Part shown: positions 9,588 to 36,305 of the stretch, one piece after another
How the letters are laid out: every line of letters begins with the position of its first letter
Numbering within the stretch: position 1 is the stretch's first letter
IMG/VR virus record: IMGVR_UViG_3300049215_000771
Location: 124,001-188,000 of that record
Reading direction: 5' to 3' (one strand)
Length of the DNA stretch: 64,000 nucleotides
Notes under the pieces: generated by a model
The model's input: only the letters and a program-made list of their open reading frames with translations
What the model was told of the DNA's origin: nothing
Databases searched by the model: none
Translations under genes and position numbers: made by a program

Positions 9588-9658
9588 GGCAATTCTCCTT
9601 CTTGCTAGGGACATATAGGAAGGATACCATTTTGGTCCCAGGAGAACAAGATTGCTTG

Positions 9659-9666
9659 CTATATAC
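9659..9666. promoter_or_regulatory. late-promoter-like CTATATAC (palindromic TATATA, between divergent genes)
   Basis: 4 nt upstream of ATG 9671; similar TAnATA boxes precede other F-x-x-(F/W)-x2-4-E genes. Confidence 0.5.
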
Positions 9667-9670
9667 AATC

Positions 9671-10216
9671 ATGGAAACAATGACATTCCGCAACTTTCTG
9701 TTGGAACAGGAGAGCGAGCAACAAGCGCAGCAGCTACAGGCCAAGGTCAAGGAATTGAGCCAGCCGCAGACCGTCCAGCGCATGATACAGATGGTGGGGG
9801 CCAAAAACCTCGACGATCTGATTGCCAAATTGCGTGTCAACCCAAAGGTCCAGGCTGTTATTCAACAATATCAGCAACTCAAAGTAAATGAGGCATATTC
9901 AGAAGGGATGATGGGCACCATATTCGGGGGTATATGGAAAGCCCTCACTGGTGTATTTCGTTGGGCTTTATCGTCAATAGGAAAGACTATTGCTCATGTT
10001 TTTGCCCCTTTCGGCGATAGCAGTGAGGGTGTAGGAGCCAAGATGGAATACGCATCCATGTTGCTTCTTACCTTCGGGTTGTCGGGAACCCTTCTTGCTG
10101 CCGGGGCACCTGTAGCTGTCGCCGCAGCCGCTATGCCCTTTACAGCAACAATGTGGGGGTTGATGTGGTTCGGAAAGAACTTCCTGGAGCCTGTATTGAA
10201 AATGACAGATGGATAA
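9671..10216 (+). CDS. putative virion protein with CTS-like N-terminus and C-terminal hydrophobic helices
   Basis: Starts METMTFRNFLLEQ; no SD. Confidence 0.65.
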   Translation: METMTFRNFLLEQESEQQAQQLQAKVKELSQPQTVQRMIQMVGAKNLDDLIAKLRVNPKVQAVIQQYQQLKVNEAYSEGMMGTIFGGIWKALTGVFRWALSSIGKTIAHVFAPFGDSSEGVGAKMEYASMLLLTFGLSGTLLAAGAPVAVAAAAMPFTATMWGLMWFGKNFLEPVLKMTDG

Positions 10217-19298: not shown

Positions 19299-19757
19299 TC
19301 ATATTTGTGCTTTTGTAGCACCAACCCCTGCGGCCTCCCGCTCGCCCGAATGGTCGCCCAGGGCTGGCTTTATCAGATTGTAGTCAGTATCCATCAGTTC
19401 GGCCCGCTCGAACCAGTAATCTGGTACTTGCGGGTAGCCTGTTGCTTTTGCTTTCTCTTCAAACATTACCTGCGCAGGCGGGTGTCCGCCATGATACACA
19501 AGGTATTGAGCCGGGACTCCATGCCCCGGCAACTTCGCAATGAACTTCGAGAAGTTGCCGAACCGATTGAATGGCGGGTCATAAGGTGGCGGTCCCTCGA
19601 ATCGCATGTCGATAGCGCCAATAATACCATCCTTACATGGCAAACCAGGGACACGAATCATGCCACAGGGCACCGCAGCCTTCTCTTGTGGAGGCACAGA
19701 AAAACTCGCCATCTCTGCGAGAATCAACCATTCTCGAAAATTCATCGAAGTCTTCAT
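19299..19757 (-). CDS. putative virion internal protein with CTS-like N-terminus
   Basis: MKTSMNFREWLILAE; GTACATAC box 4 nt upstream, no SD. Confidence 0.6.
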   Translation of the reverse strand: MKTSMNFREWLILAEMASFSVPPQEKAAVPCGMIRVPGLPCKDGIIGAIDMRFEGPPPYDPPFNRFGNFSKFIAKLPGHGVPAQYLVYHGGHPPAQVMFEEKAKATGYPQVPDYWFERAELMDTDYNLIKPALGDHSGEREAAGVGATKAQI

Positions 19758-19839
19758 GTCGGTATGTACTGGTAATAGTTACAGAAAACCATCACCCTCT
19801 CTCTAAATAATGGACCTTACCCCTAATAACTGAGGCTTG

Positions 19840-28665: not shown

Positions 28666-28899
28666 ATGAGGGATGAATCGTTCGTCCGCAAGCCGTATCA
28701 GGCCACTGACTTCGCCGCTGCTGTGGCCCAGGTGAATCGCCAGCGCTGCCAGCGTTGTGAGGGCAAGGTCCGGTTCAATAACCAGACCAGCAAGCCCGAC
28801 AACGAAGGTATCGTGACGCTGGCCGGCATCTGCACCGAATGCCATCAGACCCACAGCATCATCTTCAACATCAACAACTTCGTGGTCCGGGAAGTCTAA
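28666..28899 (+). CDS. zinc-ribbon protein
   Basis: CQRC...CTEC; GGGAG SD. Confidence 0.7.
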   Translation: MRDESFVRKPYQATDFAAAVAQVNRQRCQRCEGKVRFNNQTSKPDNEGIVTLAGICTECHQTHSIIFNINNFVVREV

Positions 28900-28901
28900 C
28901 T

Positions 28902-29120
28902 ATGAATGAAGAAGTCGTCATCAACCTGCCCGTCGATCAGGCCAAGCTGCTTGTTGTCAGCATCCGGGCGGCGGCGGCACTGAGCCGCAATCACCGGCAC
29001 AACAAGCAGGCTGATGAATTCAGCGAATTGGCTGACATCATCCAGCGCCAGGTGGATGACCACGAAGAAGCAGAAGCGTTCGATGATCCCGGCGAGAATC
29101 GAACCTTCCTGGACGATTAA
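28902..29120 (+). CDS. hypothetical protein
   Basis: Coupled ORF. Confidence 0.65.
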   Translation: MNEEVVINLPVDQAKLLVVSIRAAAALSRNHRHNKQADEFSELADIIQRQVDDHEEAEAFDDPGENRTFLDD

Positions 29121-29122
29121 CC

Positions 29123-29971
29123 ATGAGCAGGATCAAGCAAACGAGCGACGTAATCGGCAACGCCATGAGGGAGGGGACTCCCCCGTGGCGTATGCCGTTT
29201 GTTGCCCACAAAAACAGCGGATTCCCCACCAACGCCTATACAAACCGGCAATATGGTGGTATAAATCCATTACTGCTCAATATCGCCGCCCTCAAGAATG
29301 GACACACCAGCAAGTATTGGGCGACGTACAAGCAGTGGGCCGGCATGGGCTGCCAGGTCAAGCGCCGTCCCGACGACGTGCCAGAAGGCGAATGGGCTGC
29401 CAAGATTGTCCGCCGAACCTACAACGAGGAAGATGACAAGGTTTCGTGGTCGCCGATCTTGGTTTTCAACGCCTCCCAGGTGTTTGGAAATTTCCATGTC
29501 GTTCCGGCGACGGCGTACCAGGTGTTGAAGGCAGAGATTTCCGACACCCCACCTGACTATAGTAACACGGATCGTTTGCTGGCCCAGGCGGTTTTCAAGG
29601 AAGGTGGCTACAGCAGGCCACGCTACGAGCGCCCGCCCAAAGACTTCATCTGTATGCCTTGGCGGAAGCGGTTTGTTGATGATGCTCACTGGTATGGTTC
29701 GTGTCTGCATGAGCTAATCCATTGGGCTGAATGGCGCACGGGATGGAAAGGCAGTGAAGAACAAGGCGAATTGATCGCTGAGATCGGCCAGGCGTATCTG
29801 GAAACACTTCTCGGCGTGCCGCATTGCAACGACTTGACCAACTACAACAAATGGTTGGACGACTGGCTCCGGGCGATGGACGAAGACCCACGATACATCT
29901 ACGAAGCCACCGCACAGGCCGAAAAAGCAGTCGATTTTGTCATGGGTCGTCGCCCCAACCGTGACGAATAG
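29123..29971 (+). CDS. ardC: ArdC-family antirestriction / ssDNA-binding protein
   Basis: TPPWRMPF...PTN...YGGINPLLL...WATYKQW...G..V N-domain plus zincin LHELIHW...GELIAEIG. Confidence 0.85.
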   Translation: MSRIKQTSDVIGNAMREGTPPWRMPFVAHKNSGFPTNAYTNRQYGGINPLLLNIAALKNGHTSKYWATYKQWAGMGCQVKRRPDDVPEGEWAAKIVRRTYNEEDDKVSWSPILVFNASQVFGNFHVVPATAYQVLKAEISDTPPDYSNTDRLLAQAVFKEGGYSRPRYERPPKDFICMPWRKRFVDDAHWYGSCLHELIHWAEWRTGWKGSEEQGELIAEIGQAYLETLLGVPHCNDLTNYNKWLDDWLRAMDEDPRYIYEATAQAEKAVDFVMGRRPNRDE

Positions 29972-31441: not shown

Positions 31442-31881
31442 TGAAACTTACTCTGCTGCAACAGAAGAACAGGCCGATCCACAAGCTACGGCCTCGTGGC
31501 AAGTCGGTGGTCGCATTCACCTACTGTGGCGTGGAACCCTGTCGCAAGGGCGTCCGCACCGAGGGTGTGAACGTCGGCCAGATGAAGGCCACCTGCAAAC
31601 ACTGCCTCGCTATCGAGGCGAAGGAGAAACCCAAGATGAAAGTTACACTCGCTGGCCCGGACGACCTGGGCGTGTGGGTGTTGCACGATGAGAACGGCAA
31701 CGCCTTCGAGATCGTCAACGACCCCCACAACTTCGTGTCGCAAGTCCTCAAGGCCGCTTCGTTGTTCGGCTACAAGGGCAACGACCCCGACGCCGCCCTG
31801 GGCGTGTTGATGGAAAACCGTGGTGAAGAAATCGACGCCCCGGCTGATGCCGAGGCGTACTTCAAGGAACTGGACGAGTAA
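31441..31881 (+). CDS. hypothetical protein
   Basis: TGATG-coupled ORF. Confidence 0.7.
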   Translation: MKLTLLQQKNRPIHKLRPRGKSVVAFTYCGVEPCRKGVRTEGVNVGQMKATCKHCLAIEAKEKPKMKVTLAGPDDLGVWVLHDENGNAFEIVNDPHNFVSQVLKAASLFGYKGNDPDAALGVLMENRGEEIDAPADAEAYFKELDE

Positions 31882-33336
31882 TTACGCCACACCGCCGAAG
31901 AGATCGGGCTGCATGGCCGCTTGCCTTGCAGCCCTTGCTTTTTTGCCACCCCCACCAGCAAGCCTCGACTTGATGATCGACTTGATATGTTCGGGGTCCA
32001 CTTCTCCACCAGAAACAGCCGGGCCGAAATAGTGTAGAGATGTAGGTTCGTGGCCCAAGTTCTGGTCCAAGCGCTTGCCCCTATCATCTGTACGGAACGC
32101 AACGGCTCTCGCTGCGTCCGATCCTCGCTTGCCCTGCCTGTAGATTTGATGGAATTGCTTCAAAGCATCATCCGGGTCCATTGGCAAGTGCGTGGCCGAT
32201 GCACCCATGCCGAGCCTGCCCTGGGCCAGCGGGACCATCACGCCGCCCTTGTCCTTGCCGATACCGACCTTTGGAATGGATTTGCCTTGCAGGGCATCGT
32301 ATTCAGGAGCCTTGGGGTCCAAAGCGCCGCCCTGGAAGTCGTAGTAACCCTTGCCATGCGATGTAATCATAACGTACATCGTTTCAACAAAGTCTACCCA
32401 TACATCCCATAGCTGCTGGGTGCCGATTCCACGACTCTTCAGTTTGTCGAGTGTGGCGACATATTTCTCAGCGCCGCCCTTCTTCCGGCCCCACTGTTTC
32501 TCCTCGAAATCGCCAGCTTTGTCCATGTCCGGGAATACTTTGGAATAAATGTCGATGTTGTGCGTGTCAATACACCCAGCACGGCCCCACAACAATTGAG
32601 CAATAAAACCAGCCTTGACCGGCTGCACACCTTTAATTTGTGACAAACGCTTGATGATTTGTACGTCATCGCCGCCTTTCGCCAGACCATTCAATTCGTG
32701 GAACAATCCTTCCTTGTTGGACCAAATATCAGCAATCGTGTCCAGCTTGAAGCCGCCGATGGAGTGGGCCAGGGCGTGATATTTGTCGCCGAATGAATCT
32801 ACGGCATGTTCGAGTTCTTGCCTAGTGACTTTGTTGGGGTAATAGTGCTTCAATATCGCCATCAATGCTTGATAATTGTCCCAATGCTTGGCGAAGGGCA
32901 CGTTGGCCGAGAGGGGGCTGAACATCAAAACCTGAGCAAAGTTTTGAGGCGAGGACTTGGCGAACGCTTGAATTGCACCGATATGGTTGGCATATCCCGA
33001 CAAAGGAGTAACAGCGCAGGAATCCCCACCCTTCATTGGTTGCCCATCAGGACCGAGGACTTGTGGTCCGCCACGTTTCTCTAGGCCGGGTTTCTCCGAG
33101 GAGATGAAGCGGTCGAGTTTGCCGGCTGGGTCTTCGCCAACTTCTACGTCGCCGAACAAGGTTTTATCTACTTTCGGCTTGTAGGTGAAGTCGGAGCCGG
33201 CCAGTTTCCTACGGTCTTTACGACCCTCGCTGACAGGTTCATCATTCAGCCATGCAGATACCTCAGTCATCACAGAAGATAGAACATATCCGCTGTACGC
33301 TTCGTCCAGGTCTACGAATTCTTTGAAATTGCTCAT
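31882..33336 (-). CDS. HhH-GPD/Ogg-like DNA glycosylase-fold protein with CTS-like N-terminus (484 aa)
   Basis: LSQIKGVQPVKAGFIAQLLWGRAGCIDTHNI keeps the helix-hairpin-helix, catalytic-position Lys and Asp; starts MSNFKEFVDLDE. Confidence 0.6.
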   Translation of the reverse strand: MSNFKEFVDLDEAYSGYVLSSVMTEVSAWLNDEPVSEGRKDRRKLAGSDFTYKPKVDKTLFGDVEVGEDPAGKLDRFISSEKPGLEKRGGPQVLGPDGQPMKGGDSCAVTPLSGYANHIGAIQAFAKSSPQNFAQVLMFSPLSANVPFAKHWDNYQALMAILKHYYPNKVTRQELEHAVDSFGDKYHALAHSIGGFKLDTIADIWSNKEGLFHELNGLAKGGDDVQIIKRLSQIKGVQPVKAGFIAQLLWGRAGCIDTHNIDIYSKVFPDMDKAGDFEEKQWGRKKGGAEKYVATLDKLKSRGIGTQQLWDVWVDFVETMYVMITSHGKGYYDFQGGALDPKAPEYDALQGKSIPKVGIGKDKGGVMVPLAQGRLGMGASATHLPMDPDDALKQFHQIYRQGKRGSDAARAVAFRTDDRGKRLDQNLGHEPTSLHYFGPAVSGGEVDPEHIKSIIKSRLAGGGGKKARAARQAAMQPDLFGGVA

Positions 33337-33340
33337 GTTG

Positions 33341-33757
33341 TTATTTAGCCAGCACTGCGGCAATCTCCTTTGCAACATATGGAACAAATTGGTAATGGTT
33401 TAATTCTGATTTCGACACCCAGGCGAAAGCATCATTTTCATGGTCCAGTCGTGGTGTTTTCTGGTTAGCCCGGCCAGTGAATAAGTACAAGGTGAAGGAA
33501 GGATCGCTGATTTTCTTATGGAATTTGATGTCGGCGGGAGCGATTCCTGTTTCTTCCATACATTCTCGTCTCATTGCTTCCTGTGGGTTTTCTCCTTCAT
33601 CTATCAAGCCGCCTGGTAAATTCCAAGCACCAGGCATCCAGGGCGCACTCATGCCACGGCGAAGGATTAGGGCTTTTCCTTCATCATTGACGATGATTAT
33701 GGCGGCGGTTGGGTGGGGTTCAGTCGCCTCCAGCCATTCTCTAAAACTGCTTGTCAT
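33341..33757 (-). CDS. NUDIX hydrolase with CTS-like N-terminus
   Basis: Nudix box GLIDEGENPQEAMRRECMEETGI preceded by WNLPGG; starts MTSSFREWLE. Confidence 0.92.
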   Translation of the reverse strand: MTSSFREWLEATEPHPTAAIIIVNDEGKALILRRGMSAPWMPGAWNLPGGLIDEGENPQEAMRRECMEETGIAPADIKFHKKISDPSFTLYLFTGRANQKTPRLDHENDAFAWVSKSELNHYQFVPYVAKEIAAVLAK

Positions 33758-33772
33758 GGTTGATTATCTAGC

Positions 33773-33801
33773 TTTACGTTGGGGCATTTTTGGGGTAGTA
33801 T
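33773..33801 (+). promoter_or_regulatory. sigma70-type promoter
   Basis: TTTACG-N17-TAGTAT. Confidence 0.65.
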
Positions 33802-33821
33802 AGCCACAAAGGGAGCGAGCG

Positions 33822-34358
33822 ATGAAAAGGGCGATGAAAAAAGCTGTCTACGCTGGAACCTTCGACATTTTTACCAGCGGTCATTGGTGGATGGTAGAGC
33901 AGGGTTTAATGCTATTCGACCACCTGGACATCGCCATCGGTGTGAATGCCGGCAAACGTGAACCTTACTTTACAACCGAAGAGCGCCGTGGTATGATCCA
34001 GGGTTGCCTGGACTTCTATTTGGTGCCGCCGCACAGGGCATCGGTGGGGGTTTTCGAGTCCCAATACCTGGTCAATTACGCCCGCTCGGTAGGGGCGAAC
34101 TACCTCATTCGTGGCCTCCGTAGCGAGGCTGATTTCGATTATGAGCGTGTGCTTCGCAATATCAACGGCGACATCGACAAGGGCATCACCACGGTTTTCT
34201 TGATGCCTCCCAGGGAGATCGCAGAAGTCAGTTCCAGCGTCGTGAAAAGTTTGATCGGGCCAGATGGCTGGGAAGATATTGTGTACAAGTACCTTCCTGG
34301 GCCGGTTTTGGAACGAGTTCTGGAGAAAGAACGTGGCAAACGAAGACCTGATGGCTAA
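33822..34358 (+). CDS. coaD: pantetheine-phosphate adenylyltransferase
   Basis: AVYAGTFDIFTSGH, YLIRGLRSEADFDYE, VSSSVVK. Confidence 0.92.
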   Translation: MKRAMKKAVYAGTFDIFTSGHWWMVEQGLMLFDHLDIAIGVNAGKREPYFTTEERRGMIQGCLDFYLVPPHRASVGVFESQYLVNYARSVGANYLIRGLRSEADFDYERVLRNINGDIDKGITTVFLMPPREIAEVSSSVVKSLIGPDGWEDIVYKYLPGPVLERVLEKERGKRRPDG

Positions 34359-34596
34359 AAGCCAACAACTCATCAATAACCTGGGGCTGAAACAACCTGA
34401 TTCTGACGGCCCAACGGTCGCCACCATCGAGGCCACGTTGAAAGAAGCGGCACGGCAATATACGGAAGAAACCATCAATAACCCGTCCCCTTCTGACCAT
34501 CTCCTGATTCACAACGCCATGTTGAAGGGATGGGAAATGGGGATTAGGCACGCCATCGCCCATATGAGGGAGAAGGGGATTACCTTTTCTGGTTGA
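34333..34596 (+). CDS. hypothetical protein
   Basis: GTG start, GGAG SD. Confidence 0.6.
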   Translation: MANEDLMAKSQQLINNLGLKQPDSDGPTVATIEATLKEAARQYTEETINNPSPSDHLLIHNAMLKGWEMGIRHAIAHMREKGITFSG

Positions 34597-34890
34597 ATGG
34601 ACAAAACTTTGCTTGCGATTATTCAATGGGTGGGGATTGGTTTTTCTGGCTTGTTTGTTTACCTTTCCTTCAAAGCGGTAGCAAGAAGTCAGAAGTACCT
34701 TGCCGAATCGAAAGCCTCACTGGAGAAGATGAAGCAAATCAACAAAGAACTCAGCAACCTGAACGCTGGGATTTGTTGTAAATGTAAACTTCCCAAGGAA
34801 CTGGTTTGCAACGATTGCTTGGGCGTTGGCGAACCACAACCAGTACCACCCAAGTATCGTTCCATCGACGAACCGTGGGAGAAAAAATGA
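34597..34890 (+). CDS. membrane-anchored coiled-coil/Cys protein ending KYRSIDEPWEKK
   Basis: N-terminal TM, CCKC...CNDC, YRSID tag. Confidence 0.7.
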   Translation: MDKTLLAIIQWVGIGFSGLFVYLSFKAVARSQKYLAESKASLEKMKQINKELSNLNAGICCKCKLPKELVCNDCLGVGEPQPVPPKYRSIDEPWEKK

Positions 34891-36305
34891 ACGAGTACAT
34901 CAGCCCCGACAACCCCAACATTGAAAGTGACAAGCCCATCGACCAGATGACCAACTTCGAGAAGGTCGTCGAGATCGCCAAGAAGGTCAAGCTGGATTGG
35001 GTCGAGAAAACCGACCGGGGCGACATGCCTCCCACTGTATTCGTTGAGCGTGGCAACGACGTTGTTGCCATCGTCATGGCCCCACAAGTGGACAGGGACG
35101 CCGCCCTTATCGCCGCTGCTCACTGTCGGAAGGGATTCAAGGCTACTGCCATGACCCTCATCATGGACGCCCATGTTCGCATGGAGAAGATGCCGGAAGG
35201 CGTCAAGGACTTGGAGGAAGCCGAAAAAATGAGCGACTTCCTCAAGAAGTACAAGCACGGCGACATGCAGAAGGCGTGTGACGAGGAGGGAGCCTGTGAG
35301 CGTGGCGACATCGCCGACTGCCTCATCTGCACCCGTATCGACGACCAGGACAACAAGAAGTGCTGGATCATGCCGTATTCCTACCACGGCAAGAAGGAAG
35401 GCAAGCCGGTTGGCGGTCCCTTCAAGTGGATGCCCGAACATCCGGCCACTGAACTCTACAACAAGGATGACGGCAAATCTCAATGGAGCGGCTACGTTTT
35501 CGAGTCTCTACAAGAGATCATGAAGATGCCGGCGCTCCTGGACGAAGATCACCAACTCATCAACCTGCTCAAGAAGGCCGGCGAAGACCTGGGAGGCGAC
35601 AAGCAGCAGTACCATGTTGGTCGGGCTATTCTTCGTGTCCTCCAGGAGAAAGGGTACTCCGTCCTGGATTTGCAGAAGCACCCGGACACCGGAGAAGTCG
35701 AGCCAATCATGCCTCTCGAACCTACTGTCTCGCTTCGTGACCTGATCCCGGAGGACGCCGGGCGTGCCATCGGCAAACTCCTCAAGGAAATCGACGAACC
35801 GGAAGAACTGAAGGTGAAGATCGTCGAAGTCCTCAAGCCGCATCAAGAAGCCATCAACGCCGCCGCCGAGAAGCATGAGATCGACCTGAAATCGGTCGAT
35901 GCCGACTTCATCGCCGAGCAAATCGCCGCCTCGCTGAAAGCCTTCAAGAAGCACAAGGCCGGGCGTCCGAAGCCGCCATTCAAGGTGAAGGTCTGGAACG
36001 GCGACCAAAGCAAGTACCTGGGTGAAGGAACCTACGTCGGCGACGTGCCGGTGTATTTCATCGCCATGCCGGATGGCTCGATTCGCTCCGCTGCCAATGC
36101 CGAGGAACGCCCCAGCGACCAGATGATCGCCGAAATGGGCGGCGAACTGATTGAGGCCGGCGACAACCCCAAGATCGTCATGGACGAACCCATCGACGAA
36201 GATGGCCGCAATGTCGTCTACGGCTGCCAGGTGTGGTGGCAACCCGCTGACGAGCCGGCCCATCACGAACATCACGAGGGCTGTGGCTGTGGGCACGACC
36301 ACTAA
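34887..36305 (+). CDS. multidomain hypothetical protein with His/Cys-rich tail (472 aa)
   Basis: ATGA coupling; C-terminus HHEHHEGCGCGHDH. Confidence 0.8.
   Translation: MNEYISPDNPNIESDKPIDQMTNFEKVVEIAKKVKLDWVEKTDRGDMPPTVFVERGNDVVAIVMAPQVDRDAALIAAAHCRKGFKATAMTLIMDAHVRMEKMPEGVKDLEEAEKMSDFLKKYKHGDMQKACDEEGACERGDIADCLICTRIDDQDNKKCWIMPYSYHGKKEGKPVGGPFKWMPEHPATELYNKDDGKSQWSGYVFESLQEIMKMPALLDEDHQLINLLKKAGEDLGGDKQQYHVGRAILRVLQEKGYSVLDLQKHPDTGEVEPIMPLEPTVSLRDLIPEDAGRAIGKLLKEIDEPEELKVKIVEVLKPHQEAINAAAEKHEIDLKSVDADFIAEQIAASLKAFKKHKAGRPKPPFKVKVWNGDQSKYLGEGTYVGDVPVYFIAMPDGSIRSAANAEERPSDQMIAEMGGELIEAGDNPKIVMDEPIDEDGRNVVYGCQVWWQPADEPAHHEHHEGCGCGHDH

What the first reader, a model, noticed from the sequence alone, without database searches (positions are those of the whole stretch)
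31882..33757. A NUDIX and HhH-glycosylase pair, both with targeting peptides: an injected DNA-protection kit?
Two adjacent minus-strand genes inside a plus-strand region. The NUDIX box is intact. The 484-aa neighbour keeps the HhH hairpin with Lys and Asp at the positions used by Ogg/EndoIII-type glycosylase-lyases, plus long unexplained flanks. MutT plus Ogg/MutM is the canonical 8-oxoG defence pair (established), and HhH-fold enzymes also act in phage base hypermodification (established). Inference: co-injected enzymes that sanitise nucleotides, degrade defence signalling nucleotides, or attack or repair modified DNA in the first minutes of infection.
Basis: partly seen in the sequence, partly recalled or inferred. 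Interest (0 to 1): 0.6.

Follow-up and report, generated by a model that had tools for sequence, protein, structure and literature searches.

The report
Capsid-tagged glycosylase and NUDIX in megaphage
A 0.53-Mb phage from moss metagenomes encodes an unannotated Ogg-like DNA glycosylase-fold protein and a MutT-like NUDIX hydrolase, and both start with a leader peptide like the one phage T4 uses to load proteins into its head, so they are probably packed in the virion and delivered with the DNA.

Summary
The observation mostly holds. Two minus-strand genes lie 4 nt apart in a plus-strand region. One is a 138-aa NUDIX hydrolase with an intact box, closest to MutT/NudI. The other is a 484-aa protein with no Pfam, PHROG, NCBIfam or PDB sequence match.

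Its AlphaFold model (pLDDT 88) is an HhH-GPD glycosylase fold. The best match is Ogg2 (Z 11.7), and the next 23 matches are all HhH-GPD enzymes. Asp257 aligns with the EndoIII catalytic Asp. The invariant Lys241 sits one residue after the canonical lyase lysine, so lyase chemistry is open.

Both proteins start like T4 capsid-targeting sequences (MSNFKEFVDLDE|A against T4 IPI MKTFKEF...). The genome has a T4-type head module: Gp23 capsid protein, Gp20 portal and an S77 prohead protease. About 25 genes share this leader together with a TAnATA-N5-ATG signal (odds ratio 35).

The NUDIX–glycosylase pairing is not conserved. It occurs only here and in one close relative. Elsewhere the glycosylase sits beside other leader-bearing genes, and the NUDIX keeps a CoaD-like neighbour.

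Packaging, injection, substrate and any 8-oxoG role are inferred. I found no sign of DNA hypermodification. Verdict: a virus-only HhH-GPD clade adapted as a probable ejected head protein.

The parts
31882..33336 (-). Gene for the 484-aa protein (stop codon 31882-31884). It is a virus-only member of the HhH-GPD glycosylase superfamily.
   Evidence: ORF. 95 homologues, all unnamed. No Pfam, PHROG, NCBIfam or PDB sequence hit. AF2 model pLDDT 88.1, pTM 0.84.
33226..33336 (-). Predicted propeptide, residues 1-37. The CTS-like leader is M-S-N-F4-K-E-F7-V8. Two putative prohead-protease sites follow: L10-D11-E12|A13 and V35-S36-E37|G38-R39.
   Evidence: T4 ipI/ipII/ipIII N-termini. gp21 specificity and CTS residues 4, 7, 8 and 10 (PMC9026906). 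Family conservation: 79/88 have the CTS-like start, 80/88 have hxE[AGS] in the first 40 residues, 72/88 have hxE[GA][RK] in the first 75. pLDDT 47-65 and disorder at 27-38. Cleavage itself is inferred.
32188..33009 (-). HhH-GPD catalytic core, residues 110-383.
   Evidence: VIA-align: 3n0u (Tm1821 Ogg2) Z 11.7, rmsd 3.0, 189 residues over model 110-383. The next 23 hits are all HhH-GPD enzymes. The Foldseek top hits are also Ogg2. ESM Atlas: virus-only clusters of about 205 aa, then a PF00730 cluster.
32536..32667 (-). Helix-hairpin-helix plus catalytic loop, residues 224-267: IKGVQPV-K241-AGFIAQLLWGRAGC-I-D257-T-H259-N260. K241 codon 32614-32616; D257 codon 32566-32568.
   Evidence: K241, D257, H259, N260, C255 and Q247 are invariant in 52 long forms and also in short 186-200-aa forms. 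hhalign to E. coli Nth: D257=D138, K241=T121. DSSP: H224-231, loop, H239-250, H258-267.
31885..31956 (-). C-terminal tail, residues 461-484: a Gly/Lys/Arg-rich linker ending in Q476-P-D-L479-F480-GGVA. It resembles a sliding-clamp-binding motif.
   Evidence: 36/88 homologues have Q-x1-3-[LMF][FW] in the last 14 residues, against 5.6% of internal windows. 54/88 have [LMF][FWY] in the last 12. Binding is not shown.
33342..33348 (-). CTAAATA motif, 5 nt before the ATG of the glycosylase gene. It overlaps the NUDIX stop codon.
   Evidence: Sequence. Genome-wide class TAnATA-N3-6-ATG with mode N5. The T4 late promoter TATAAATA lies at -13..-6 (PMC1524935). Promoter function is inferred.
33341..33757 (-). 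Gene for the 138-aa NUDIX hydrolase, MutT/NudI-like. NUDIX box residues 50-72 = 33542-33610.
   Evidence: PF00293 77.7 bits. The MutT equivalogs score below their cut-offs. Nearest PDB relatives are MutT-related, NudI, MutT and NudG. 13 orthologues.
33719..33757 (-). NUDIX N-terminal extension, residues 1-13: M-T-S-S-F5-R-E-W8-L9-E10|A-T-E13|P. It is a CTS-like leader lying outside the NUDIX domain.
   Evidence: The Pfam match starts at residue 14. The F..WLE..EP motif is kept in 8 of 11 orthologues that have an N-terminus.
33765..33771 (-). CTAGATA motif, 7 nt before the NUDIX ATG.
   Evidence: The close relative L016 has CTAAATA-N6-ATG.
33822..34358 (+). Divergently transcribed CoaD-like phosphopantetheine adenylyltransferase gene. 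It is the conserved neighbour of the NUDIX, not of the glycosylase.
   Evidence: TIGR01510 130.3 bits against a cut-off of 103.3. The same neighbourhood occurs in L014 and L016. It has an SD-type start.

Best explanation
The 484-aa gene encodes a head-internal (ejection) protein of a T4-type megaphage. Its working part is a DNA glycosylase of the HhH-GPD superfamily.

Proposed mechanism:
1. The gene belongs to a set of at least 25 genes with a T4-late-promoter-like TAnATA box placed so that transcription would start at the A of the ATG. [inferred]
2. The N-terminal leader (F4, F7, V8) docks the precursor on the scaffolding core of the prohead, as the T4 CTS does. [inferred by similarity]
3. 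The S77 prohead protease removes the leader at L-D-E12|A and V-S-E37|G. [inferred]
4. The mature enzyme (about residues 38-484) stays in the head with the DNA and enters the cell with it. [inferred]
5. There the Ogg2-like core flips out a damaged or otherwise marked base. It cleaves the N-glycosidic bond using Asp257, which is shown to be invariant and aligned with the EndoIII catalytic Asp. Chemistry and substrate are not shown.
6. The basic C-terminal tail ending in Q-P-D-L-F may tether the enzyme to DNA or to a sliding clamp. [a lead only]

The upstream NUDIX is a MutT/NudI-like nucleotide pyrophosphohydrolase with its own leader, and would be delivered the same way.

The most economical role is early repair or sanitation of a 0.5-Mb genome that has collected oxidative damage outside the cell. 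This would parallel the MutT/Ogg arms of the 8-oxoG system. The two genes are neighbours by lineage-specific chance rather than as a conserved operon.
For: Fold:
- AF2 model pLDDT 88.
- Ogg2 Z 11.7, rmsd 3.0 Å, 189 residues aligned. The top 24 matches are all HhH-GPD enzymes. The Foldseek top hits are also Ogg2.

Active-site conservation:
- D257, H259, N260, K241, C255 and Q247 are invariant in long and short forms.
- The DTH motif aligns with EndoIII D138.

Leader:
- T4 ipII/ipIII start MKTYQEFIAE|A and ipI starts MKTFKEFT...ITE|A. Here the starts are MSNFKEFVDLDE|A and MTSSFREWLE|A.
- T4 CTS residues 4 and 7 target the protein; residues 8 and 10 direct processing. gp21 cuts after L/I-x-E (PMC9026906).

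T4-type head module in the same genome:
- Gp23 289 bits, with the match starting at residue 56.
- Portal_T4 253 bits.
- Peptidase_S77 99.6 bits.
- The scaffold candidate has 2.3 hxE[AGS] sites per 100 aa, against a genome mean of 0.38. The capsid-protein N-terminus has FLNE|A, ELE|GR and LLE|G.

The leader-bearing gene set:
- 26 of 55 ATG-ORFs behind TAnATA-N3-7 carry the leader, against 148 of 5986 others. Odds ratio 35, p = 2e-26.
- Members include SAM-lyase-like, C39-protease-like and PolyA-pol-type nucleotidyltransferase proteins.
- The leader and the TAnATA box are kept on the glycosylase gene in 15 or more related megaphage loci, and flanking genes carry them too.

Short forms:
- Leader-less 186-aa forms with an SD occur in small phages. 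The one complete such genome (47.9 kb) lacks S77.

NUDIX:
- Nearest solved relatives are MutT/NudI/NudG.

Expression:
- RNA-library contigs identical to parts of the glycosylase gene occur in two moss or plant metatranscriptome runs of one study.
Against: - No virion proteome, no cleavage data and no enzymology exist for this protein or its relatives.
- Lys241 is offset by +1 from the canonical Schiff-base lysine. The second hairpin glycine is missing. AP-lyase activity may therefore be absent.
- The Pfam HhH-GPD model does not detect the protein.
- 8-oxoG specificity rests only on the best structural neighbour at 12% identity.
- The portal, protease and capsid genes do not carry the TAnATA-N5-ATG signal. 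They use SD-type starts instead. 'Late' timing of the leader-bearing set is therefore not shown.
- A C-terminal clamp-binding-like motif would fit a replication-fork enzyme as well as an ejected one.
- The RNA-library contigs could derive from contaminating DNA. They give no strand or 5' end.
- NUDIX adjacency occurs only in this lineage.
Confidence: 0.5

Rival explanations
1. The protein is a cytoplasmic base-excision-repair glycosylase linked to replication and is not packaged. It would be made in the infected cell and tethered by its C-terminal Q-x-x-L-F tail to a sliding clamp, where it scans newly made or incoming phage DNA. On this reading the N-terminal motif serves something else, for example efficient translation of leaderless mRNAs or assembly into a cytoplasmic complex.
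For: - A C-terminal basic linker plus Q-x1-3-[LMF][FW] occurs in 36/88 homologues, against 5.6% of internal windows.
- Short homologues sit in replication and nucleotide-metabolism modules: after RNR genes in DSS3_VP1, and between DnaB and a polymerase region in ParKuw1.
- The N-terminal motif is tightly linked to the TAnATA-N5-ATG signal. The link could reflect an expression constraint.
Against: - The leader matches the T4 CTS in the very positions shown to matter there (4, 7, 8 and the Glu site).
- Its offset from Met varies (1-5 residues) and its codons vary. This argues for selection on the peptide.
- A second conserved hxE|GR site lies in a disordered linker.
- No clamp gene was found in the genome (PF02768, PF02916, TIGR00663).
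- The short replication-module forms lack both the leader and the tail.
Confidence: 0.2
2. The protein is an ejected offensive or counter-defence enzyme rather than a repair enzyme. It would excise a normal or host-specific modified base from host DNA to start chromosome breakdown or to disarm a modification-dependent system. It would act together with other leader-bearing proteins, among them the ~420-aa family that is its commonest neighbour in relatives.
For: - The glycosylase gene lies next to the ~420-aa leader-bearing family in 8 or more related loci.
- The leader-bearing set includes takeover-type enzymes: SAM-lyase-like, a C39-like protease and a nucleotidyltransferase.
- An ArdC-like anti-restriction gene is nearby.
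- The family is virus-only.
- Distant short homologues occur in roseophages that replace dT by dU (PMC8323127, title listed).
Against: - Nothing indicates that this phage's own DNA is modified, so self-protection is unexplained. No ThyA-like hydroxymethylase and no TGT/DpdA were found.
- The ~420-aa partner has no assignable fold (pLDDT 60; best Z 5.8, to helical transporters).
- The nearest structures are repair glycosylases.
Confidence: 0.17
3. The protein is a DNA hypermodification transferase with a glycosylase-like fold, of the aGPT-Pplase or 5-PmdU glycinyltransferase type, acting on phage DNA after replication.
For: The phage PaMx11 gp46 transferase appears in the structural hit list (8z2m, Z 4.5). 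Short homologues lie near nucleotide-metabolism genes in small phages.
Against: - Z 4.5 ranks 25th, far below Ogg2 (11.7) and all classical glycosylases.
- No Pfam hit to any family.
- No hydroxymethylase of the thymidylate-synthase family is present to make 5-hmdU or 5-hmdC.
- An enzyme that is packaged and ejected would be oddly placed for post-replicative modification.
Confidence: 0.05
4. The protein is a non-catalytic DNA-binding internal protein. The HhH fold would serve only to bind and organise packaged DNA, like the T4 IPs or inner-body proteins.
For: The canonical lysine position is hydrophobic and the second hairpin Gly is lost. The tail is basic.
Against: Asp257, His259, Asn260, Cys255 and Gln247 are strictly invariant across forms with only 24-27% identity. 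These include short forms in small phages that lack the leader. This is typical of an active site.
Confidence: 0.08

Closest known systems
Ogg2-type 8-oxoguanine DNA glycosylases (Thermotoga maritima Tm1821, PDB 3n0u; Methanocaldococcus jannaschii MjOgg, 3knt/3fhf)
   Same: Best structural match: Z 11.7, rmsd 3.0 Å, 189 of 209 residues. Both are compact, cluster-free HhH-GPD cores of about 200 aa. Both have an Asp at the N-cap of the helix after the HhH.
   Different: Sequence identity is 12%. The Pfam HhH-GPD model does not detect this protein. The lysine is offset by one residue. This protein adds a 109-aa N-terminal region (leader, linker, small beta-hairpin and helix) and a 100-aa C-terminal helical extension with a basic tail. 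The family is virus-only. The substrate is unknown.
Endonuclease III (Nth) / MutY family
   Same: HhH followed by a Gly-rich loop and an identical D-T-H catalytic motif. Same fold, Z 7.5-8.3.
   Different: No [4Fe-4S] cysteine cluster. No Lys at the position of K120.
T4 internal proteins IPI/IPII/IPIII and Alt (CTS-directed, gp21-processed, ejected head proteins)
   Same: An N-terminal 10-20-aa leader with aromatic residues at about positions 4 and 7, an aliphatic residue at 8, and an (L/I)-x-E|A cleavage site. The genome encodes Gp23-, Gp20- and gp21-type head proteins. The cargo domains are diverse and unrelated to each other.
   Different: The cargo here is a set of enzymes: a glycosylase fold, NUDIX, SAM-lyase-like, protease and nucleotidyltransferase. 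The genome is 0.53 Mb. The genes carry a TAnATA box that abuts the ATG. Packaging has not been shown experimentally.
E. coli MutT / NudI / NudG NUDIX (d)NTP pyrophosphohydrolases; T4 NudE
   Same: Single-domain protein of about 130 aa with an intact NUDIX box. Full-length profile matches to MutT, NudI and NudG structures (E 1e-15 to 1e-11).
   Different: Scores fall below the MutT equivalog cut-offs (54-56 bits against 98-148). It has a 13-aa CTS-like N-terminal extension. The substrate is untested.
Phage thymidine-hypermodification transferases with a glycosylase-like fold (PaMx11 gp46, PDB 8z2m)
   Same: A phage-encoded HhH-GPD-like fold that acts on DNA.
   Different: Only Z 4.5. No 5-hmdU pathway genes were found. 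No sequence relationship was detected.

Membership tests
HhH-GPD DNA glycosylase superfamily | Two-lobed all-alpha fold with a helix-hairpin-helix | tested here: met
   AF2 model pLDDT 88. The top 24 VIA-align hits are all HhH-GPD enzymes, the best at Z 11.7. Foldseek's top hits are Ogg2.
HhH-GPD DNA glycosylase superfamily | Gly/Pro-rich loop followed by an invariant catalytic Asp about 16-20 residues after the HhH | tested here: met
   G251, G254 and D257 are invariant. D257-T-H aligns with EndoIII D138-T-H.
HhH-GPD DNA glycosylase superfamily | Canonical hairpin h-P-G-h-G | tested here: inconclusive
   I-K-G236-V-Q238 here. The family consensus is IPGVxP. The second Gly is kept only in some short forms (ParKuw1 LPGLG).
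HhH-GPD DNA glycosylase superfamily | Match to Pfam PF00730 at the gathering score | tested here: not met
   No Pfam family at E<=1. PF00730 finds nothing in the 532-kb genome at E<=10.
Bifunctional glycosylase/AP-lyases (Nth, Ogg1, Ogg2) | Nucleophilic Lys at the start of HhH helix 2 (EndoIII K120) | tested here: inconclusive
   Invariant K241 aligns with T121, and V240 with K120, in a gap-free hhalign. That alignment is weak (E 0.05). No coordinates were available for a superposition.
Nth/MutY subfamily | C-terminal [4Fe-4S] cluster loop (Cys-x6-Cys-x2-Cys-x5-Cys) | tested here: not met
   Only C107 and C255 are conserved cysteines.
Ogg2 (8-oxoG-specific) | 8-oxoG recognition and activity | not testable with these tools
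   Only fold similarity at 12% identity.
NUDIX hydrolase superfamily | NUDIX box GX5EX7REUXEEXGU and PF00293 above its cut-off | tested here: met
   Residues 50-72. 77.7 bits against 21.1. R64, E65, E68 and E69 are invariant.
MutT (8-oxo-dGTP diphosphatase) equivalog | Score above the NCBIfam TIGR00586 / NF008044 cut-off | tested here: not met
   54.3 and 56.2 bits against cut-offs of 97.9 and 148.
T4-type CTS-bearing internal head proteins | N-terminal leader with targeting residues at about positions 4 and 7, and a processing site (L/I)-x-E | tested here: met
   MSNFKEFVDLDE|A and MTSSFREWLE|A against T4 MKTYQEFIAE|A and MKTFKEF.... Rules from PMC9026906. The NUDIX P3 residue is Trp rather than L/I.
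T4-type CTS-bearing internal head proteins | gp21-type prohead protease and a T4-type core/shell in the same genome | tested here: met
   Peptidase_S77 99.6 bits, Gp23 289.5 bits, Portal_T4 252.9 bits. The scaffold candidate is rich in hxE sites.
T4-type CTS-bearing internal head proteins | Physical presence in the virion, N-terminal processing, ejection | not testable with these tools
   The phage is uncultured and no proteome exists.
aGPT-Pplase-type DNA hypermodification transferases | Close fold or sequence match, plus a 5-hmdU/5-hmdC supply pathway | tested here: not met
   8z2m Z 4.5, rank 25. No PF00303 member in the genome.
Sliding-clamp-binding proteins | Terminal QL[SD]LF-like peptide that binds the clamp | tested here: inconclusive
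   The pattern Q476-P-D-L-F480 is present and enriched in the family. Binding was not assessed: the complex job gave no verdict. No clamp gene was found.

The most novel reading that the evidence does not exclude
Half-megabase T4-type megaphages carry a dedicated, co-regulated set of 25 or more enzymes. The set would be written with leaderless mRNAs from TAnATA late-type promoters and tagged with a T4-like capsid-targeting propeptide. The enzymes would be loaded into the head and shot into the cell. Among them would be a virus-only Ogg-like glycosylase and a MutT-like NUDIX that repair or sanitise the incoming giant genome before it is expressed. That would be a phage counterpart of the base-excision-repair enzymes reported in giant eukaryotic virus particles (that comparison is from memory and was not checked here).
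Probability: 0.3. Interest if true: 0.75.

Novelty: new variant of a known kind. Interest (0 to 1): 0.55.

Why it matters
- It assigns a fold and a probable activity to a virus-only protein family that no library names. The family has at least 95 members at 90% clustering, plus short forms.
- It suggests how very large phages may extend the T4 trick of loading arbitrary cargo into the head with a short leader. This gives a simple sequence rule for predicting the ejected proteome of uncultured megaphages from genomes alone: M-x1-5-[FY]-x-x-[FWY]-[LIVM]...hxE|[AGS], often behind TAnATA-N5-ATG.
- If the glycosylase is delivered with the DNA, it would be the first phage example I know of a repair-type glycosylase used as a virion component.
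- The finding also corrects the idea of a conserved NUDIX/glycosylase operon.

Tried and rejected
- **Sequence-family searches on the 484-aa protein.** Pfam, PHROGs and NCBIfam found nothing. phmmer and a family profile against PDB sequences gave no meaningful hit; one chance EmrA row appeared.
- **Complex prediction.** The C-terminal 45 residues with E. coli DnaN gave no verdict (score 0.14, mark 0.34). This is not evidence either way.
- **Phage-encoded clamp.** PF02768, PF02916 and TIGR00663 found none.
- **Cellular homologues.** A pattern scan of 185,579 species genomes found none. The method is limited by its patterns.
- **NUDIX as conserved partner.** Rejected after 15 or more loci.
- **The ~420-aa conserved neighbour family.** No Pfam or PHROG match. 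The AF2 model is poor (pLDDT 60). The only fold matches are low-Z helical-bundle rows. My reading of its RSDPADL...SLK...E motif as a PD-(D/E)xK nuclease is untested.
- **Hypermodification.** No PF00303 or PF01702 member.
- **Literature.** I found no paper linking capsid-targeting sequences to megaphages, and no mention of this gene in the dU-roseophage enzyme paper.
- **RNA evidence.** Only assembled contigs were available, so they give no 5' ends or strand.
- **Searches not run.** I did not run the large representative-protein search or the third word search. The fold was already assigned, and those libraries carry no taxonomy.
Full report
**Where the window lies.** The window is bases 124001-188000 of a 532,729-bp IMG/VR virus record with CheckV completeness 100%. 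Runs that hold the locus are moss metagenomes. The genome has a T4-type head module:
- a Gp23-family major capsid protein (289.5 bits; the match starts at residue 56, leaving an N-terminal propeptide-sized extension);
- a Gp20-type portal (252.9 bits, with an intein-like insert);
- a Peptidase_S77 (gp21-like) prohead protease (99.6 bits);
- between protease and capsid gene, a 299-aa scaffold candidate with 2.3 hxE[AGS] sites per 100 aa, against a genome mean of 0.38.

**Observation.** ORFs 33341..33757(-) (138 aa) and 31882..33336(-) (484 aa from ATG) are real. They are separated by 4 nt and flanked by plus-strand ORFs.

The small protein is a NUDIX hydrolase. PF00293 scores 77.7 bits and the box spans residues 50-72. 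The MutT equivalog models score below their cut-offs. Its nearest solved relatives are MutT-related, NudI, MutT and NudG enzymes over the full length.

The 484-aa protein matches nothing in Pfam, PHROGs, NCBIfam or PDB sequences. It has 95 unnamed homologues, many on contigs of 200-670 kb.

**Fold.** With a 52-sequence alignment, AlphaFold2 gives pLDDT 88.1 and pTM 0.84.
- A Foldseek-independent scan of 48,161 PDB chains puts the Ogg2 enzyme Tm1821 first (Z 11.7, rmsd 3.0 Å, 189 residues, model 110-383).
- The next 23 matches are all HhH-GPD superfamily members: hOGG1, EndoIII, Mag1, ROS1, AlkA, MagIII, MutY, Qng1, AGOG and TAG.
- The phage hypermodification transferase gp46 scores only Z 4.5.
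- Foldseek also ranks Ogg2 first.
- BFVD and the ESM Atlas show virus-only clusters of about 190-205-aa proteins with the same core, followed by a bacterial PF00730 cluster.

**Active site.** K241, D257, H259, N260, C255 and Q247 are invariant in the long forms. They are also invariant in short forms of 186-200 aa that share only 24-27% identity. A profile alignment to E. coli Nth is weak statistically (E 0.05). It aligns D257-T-H with D138-T-H. It places K241 on T121, one residue after the Schiff-base lysine K120, whose position holds V240. The helix-2 register (A/A, hydrophobic pairs, W/F, G/G) favours this gap-free alignment. There is no Fe-S cysteine cluster. I conclude a catalytically competent glycosylase-type site. 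Whether it also has lyase activity is open.

**Leaders.** I read the T4 genome directly. ipII and ipIII begin MKTYQEFIAE|A, and ipI begins MKTFKEFTSTTTPVSTITE|A. In T4 the first 10 residues suffice for head targeting. Residues 4 and 7 govern targeting and residues 8 and 10 govern processing. gp21 cuts after L/I-x-E (PMC9026906).
- The glycosylase begins MSNF4KEF7V8DL10DE12|A. A second conserved site, V35-S-E37|G-R, lies in a disordered stretch (pLDDT < 50 at 27-38).
- Of 88 near-full-length homologues, 79 keep the leader, 80 have an hxE[AGS] site in the first 40 residues, and 72 have an hxE[GA][RK] site in the first 75.
- The capsid protein's own N-terminus contains FLNE|A, ELE|GR and LLE|G.
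- The NUDIX begins MTSSF5REW8L9E10|ATE13|P. This lies outside the Pfam domain, which starts at residue 14. Eight of the 11 orthologues that have an N-terminus keep F..WLE..EP.

**A set of leader-bearing genes with a shared upstream signal.** Many leader-bearing genes have (C/G)TAnATA 3-6 nt before the ATG. The mode is 5 nt (33 cases) and 4 nt comes next (13 cases); the class holds 52 ORFs in all.
- Among 6041 ATG-initiated frames of at least 60 codons, 26 of 55 behind the box carry the leader, against 148 of 5986 others (odds ratio 35, p = 2e-26).
- The T4 late promoter TATAAATA lies at -13 to -6 (PMC1524935). A box followed by N5 would therefore put +1 on the A of the ATG, which means leaderless mRNAs. 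This is inference.
- The glycosylase gene has CTAAATA-ACAAC-ATG, and the box overlaps the NUDIX stop codon. The NUDIX has CTAGATA-N7-ATG.
- Portal, protease and capsid genes instead have SD-type starts, so timing is not settled.
- Members of the set with recognisable domains are SAM-lyase-like proteins, a C39-like cysteine protease and a PolyA-pol-type nucleotidyltransferase.

**Synteny.**
- The glycosylase homologue has no NUDIX neighbour in L004, L005/6, L007-9, L010, L011, L012 or in the IMG/VR loci L039-L052.
- Only the closest relative, L016, keeps CoaD | NUDIX | glycosylase | ... | ArdC.
- In L014 a 73%-identical NUDIX sits in the same CoaD...ArdC slot without the glycosylase.
- The NUDIX's steady neighbour is therefore the CoaD-like gene (TIGR01510, 130 bits against a cut-off of 103).
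- The glycosylase's commonest neighbour is a ~420-aa leader-bearing family. It is adjacent in L010, L011, L012, L040, L043, L044/45, L051 and L052. The copy in this genome lies 80 kb away, at 235982-237232. That family could not be assigned a fold.
- In nearly all megaphage loci the glycosylase gene keeps both the leader and the TAnATA box.
- Short forms have an SD and no leader. The one complete short-form genome (47.9 kb) lacks an S77 protease.
- S77 was found in 2 of 5 large but incomplete relatives.

**C-terminus.** Most homologues end in a Gly/Lys/Arg-rich linker followed by Q-x-x-L-F, here Q476-P-D-L-F480-GGVA. Of 88 homologues, 36 fit the strict pattern, against 5.6% of internal windows. 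This looks like a sliding-clamp-binding peptide. No clamp gene was found and the complex job gave no verdict. It stays a lead.

**Other checks.**
- No relative was found in 185,579 prokaryotic species genomes by pattern scan.
- No ThyA-like hydroxymethylase or TGT/DpdA was found in the genome.
- Distant short homologues occur in DSS3_VP1, a roseophage with dT-to-dU substitution (PMC8323127). There the gene follows the RNR genes. They also occur in Paracoccus phage ParKuw1, next to DnaB.
- Contigs from two RNA libraries are 100% identical to 32066-32432, 32133-32283, 32430-32757 and 32975-33190, all inside the glycosylase gene. None covers the NUDIX. Contigs give no strand or 5' end, and DNA carry-over is possible.

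**Conclusion.**
- Shown: the genes, the NUDIX box, the HhH-GPD fold, the invariant Asp-centred site, the T4-like leaders, the T4-type head module with its protease, the statistical link between leader and TAnATA box, and the lack of conserved pairing.
- Inferred: head targeting, cleavage at E12 and E37, ejection, glycosylase activity, leaderless late transcription and clamp binding.
- Best reading (about 0.5): an ejected head protein with an Ogg-like glycosylase core, next to a similarly tagged MutT-like NUDIX. They belong to a larger tagged enzyme set, and the adjacency is a lineage accident.
- Rivals: a non-packaged, clamp-tethered repair enzyme (0.2); an ejected offensive or counter-defence glycosylase (0.17); a non-catalytic DNA binder (0.08); a hypermodification transferase (0.05).

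Noticed in passing
window 9653-9673 (+), 19755-19774 (-), 33334-33348 (-), 33755-33771 (-); genome-wide list: About 52 ORFs in the genome have (C/G)TAnATA 3-6 nt (mode 5) before the ATG, with no room for a Shine-Dalgarno. 41% of all CTAnATA occurrences are followed by an ATG at N3-7. The box equals the 3' part of the T4 late promoter at -13..-6, so these may be leaderless mRNAs. The main head genes use SD starts instead.
   Followed up: partly
G000 235982-237232 (-) (outside the window); L010 9338-10651, L011 7359-8576, L012 7547-8803, L043 2667-3980, L044 2398-3723, L051 5200-6468, L052 2514-3779: A ~420-aa family with the same N-terminal leader is the commonest immediate neighbour of the glycosylase gene in relatives. 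It has no Pfam or PHROG match, a poor AF2 model and no fold match. Its conserved RSDPADL..CS...LGxSLK..E motif recalls PD-(D/E)xK nucleases. That reading is untested.
   Followed up: partly
window 33822-34358 (+): A CoaD-type phosphopantetheine adenylyltransferase (TIGR01510 above its cut-off) is encoded by a phage. It is the conserved divergent neighbour of the NUDIX in three genomes. A CoA- or dephospho-CoA-related role for the NUDIX was not examined.
   Followed up: no
window 29123-29971 (+): An ArdC-N plus MPTase-PolyVal (zincin) protein of anti-restriction type. In relative L016 its gene is split by a LAGLIDADG ORF.
   Followed up: no
G000 28798-29505, 459469-459861, 352827-353429, 256320-258047 (outside the window): Other leader-bearing proteins carry SAM-lyase-like/DUF3293, Peptidase_C39-like and PolyA_pol nucleotidyltransferase domains. 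This looks like a set of takeover enzymes.
   Followed up: partly
G000 330903-333470 (outside the window): The T4-type portal gene is 855 aa. It has an intein-like insert (Intein_splicing 33.7 bits, just under its cut-off, residues 157-335) with HTH-like hits.
   Followed up: no
L013 (T4 NC_000866 64939-67490): T4 itself clusters denV (a glycosylase), ipII, ipIII, e and nudE (a NUDIX) within 2.6 kb. This is a curious parallel to the neighbourhood here and is probably coincidental.
   Followed up: no
L017 5773-6342 (DSS3_VP1), L018 4839-5441 (ParKuw1), L054 3998-4558: Short 186-200-aa stand-alone forms of the same HhH-GPD clade sit in replication or nucleotide-metabolism modules of small phages. 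One of these is a phage family whose DNA has dU in place of dT.
   Followed up: partly
window 34806-36305 (+): A 499-aa ORF with no family match. It ends in a His/Cys-rich tail (HHEHHEGCGCGHDH), which may bind metal.
   Followed up: no
window 31500-34500: The locus occurs in moss metagenomes from several studies. RNA-library contigs identical to four parts of the glycosylase gene were found in two runs of one study. None covers the NUDIX.
   Followed up: partly
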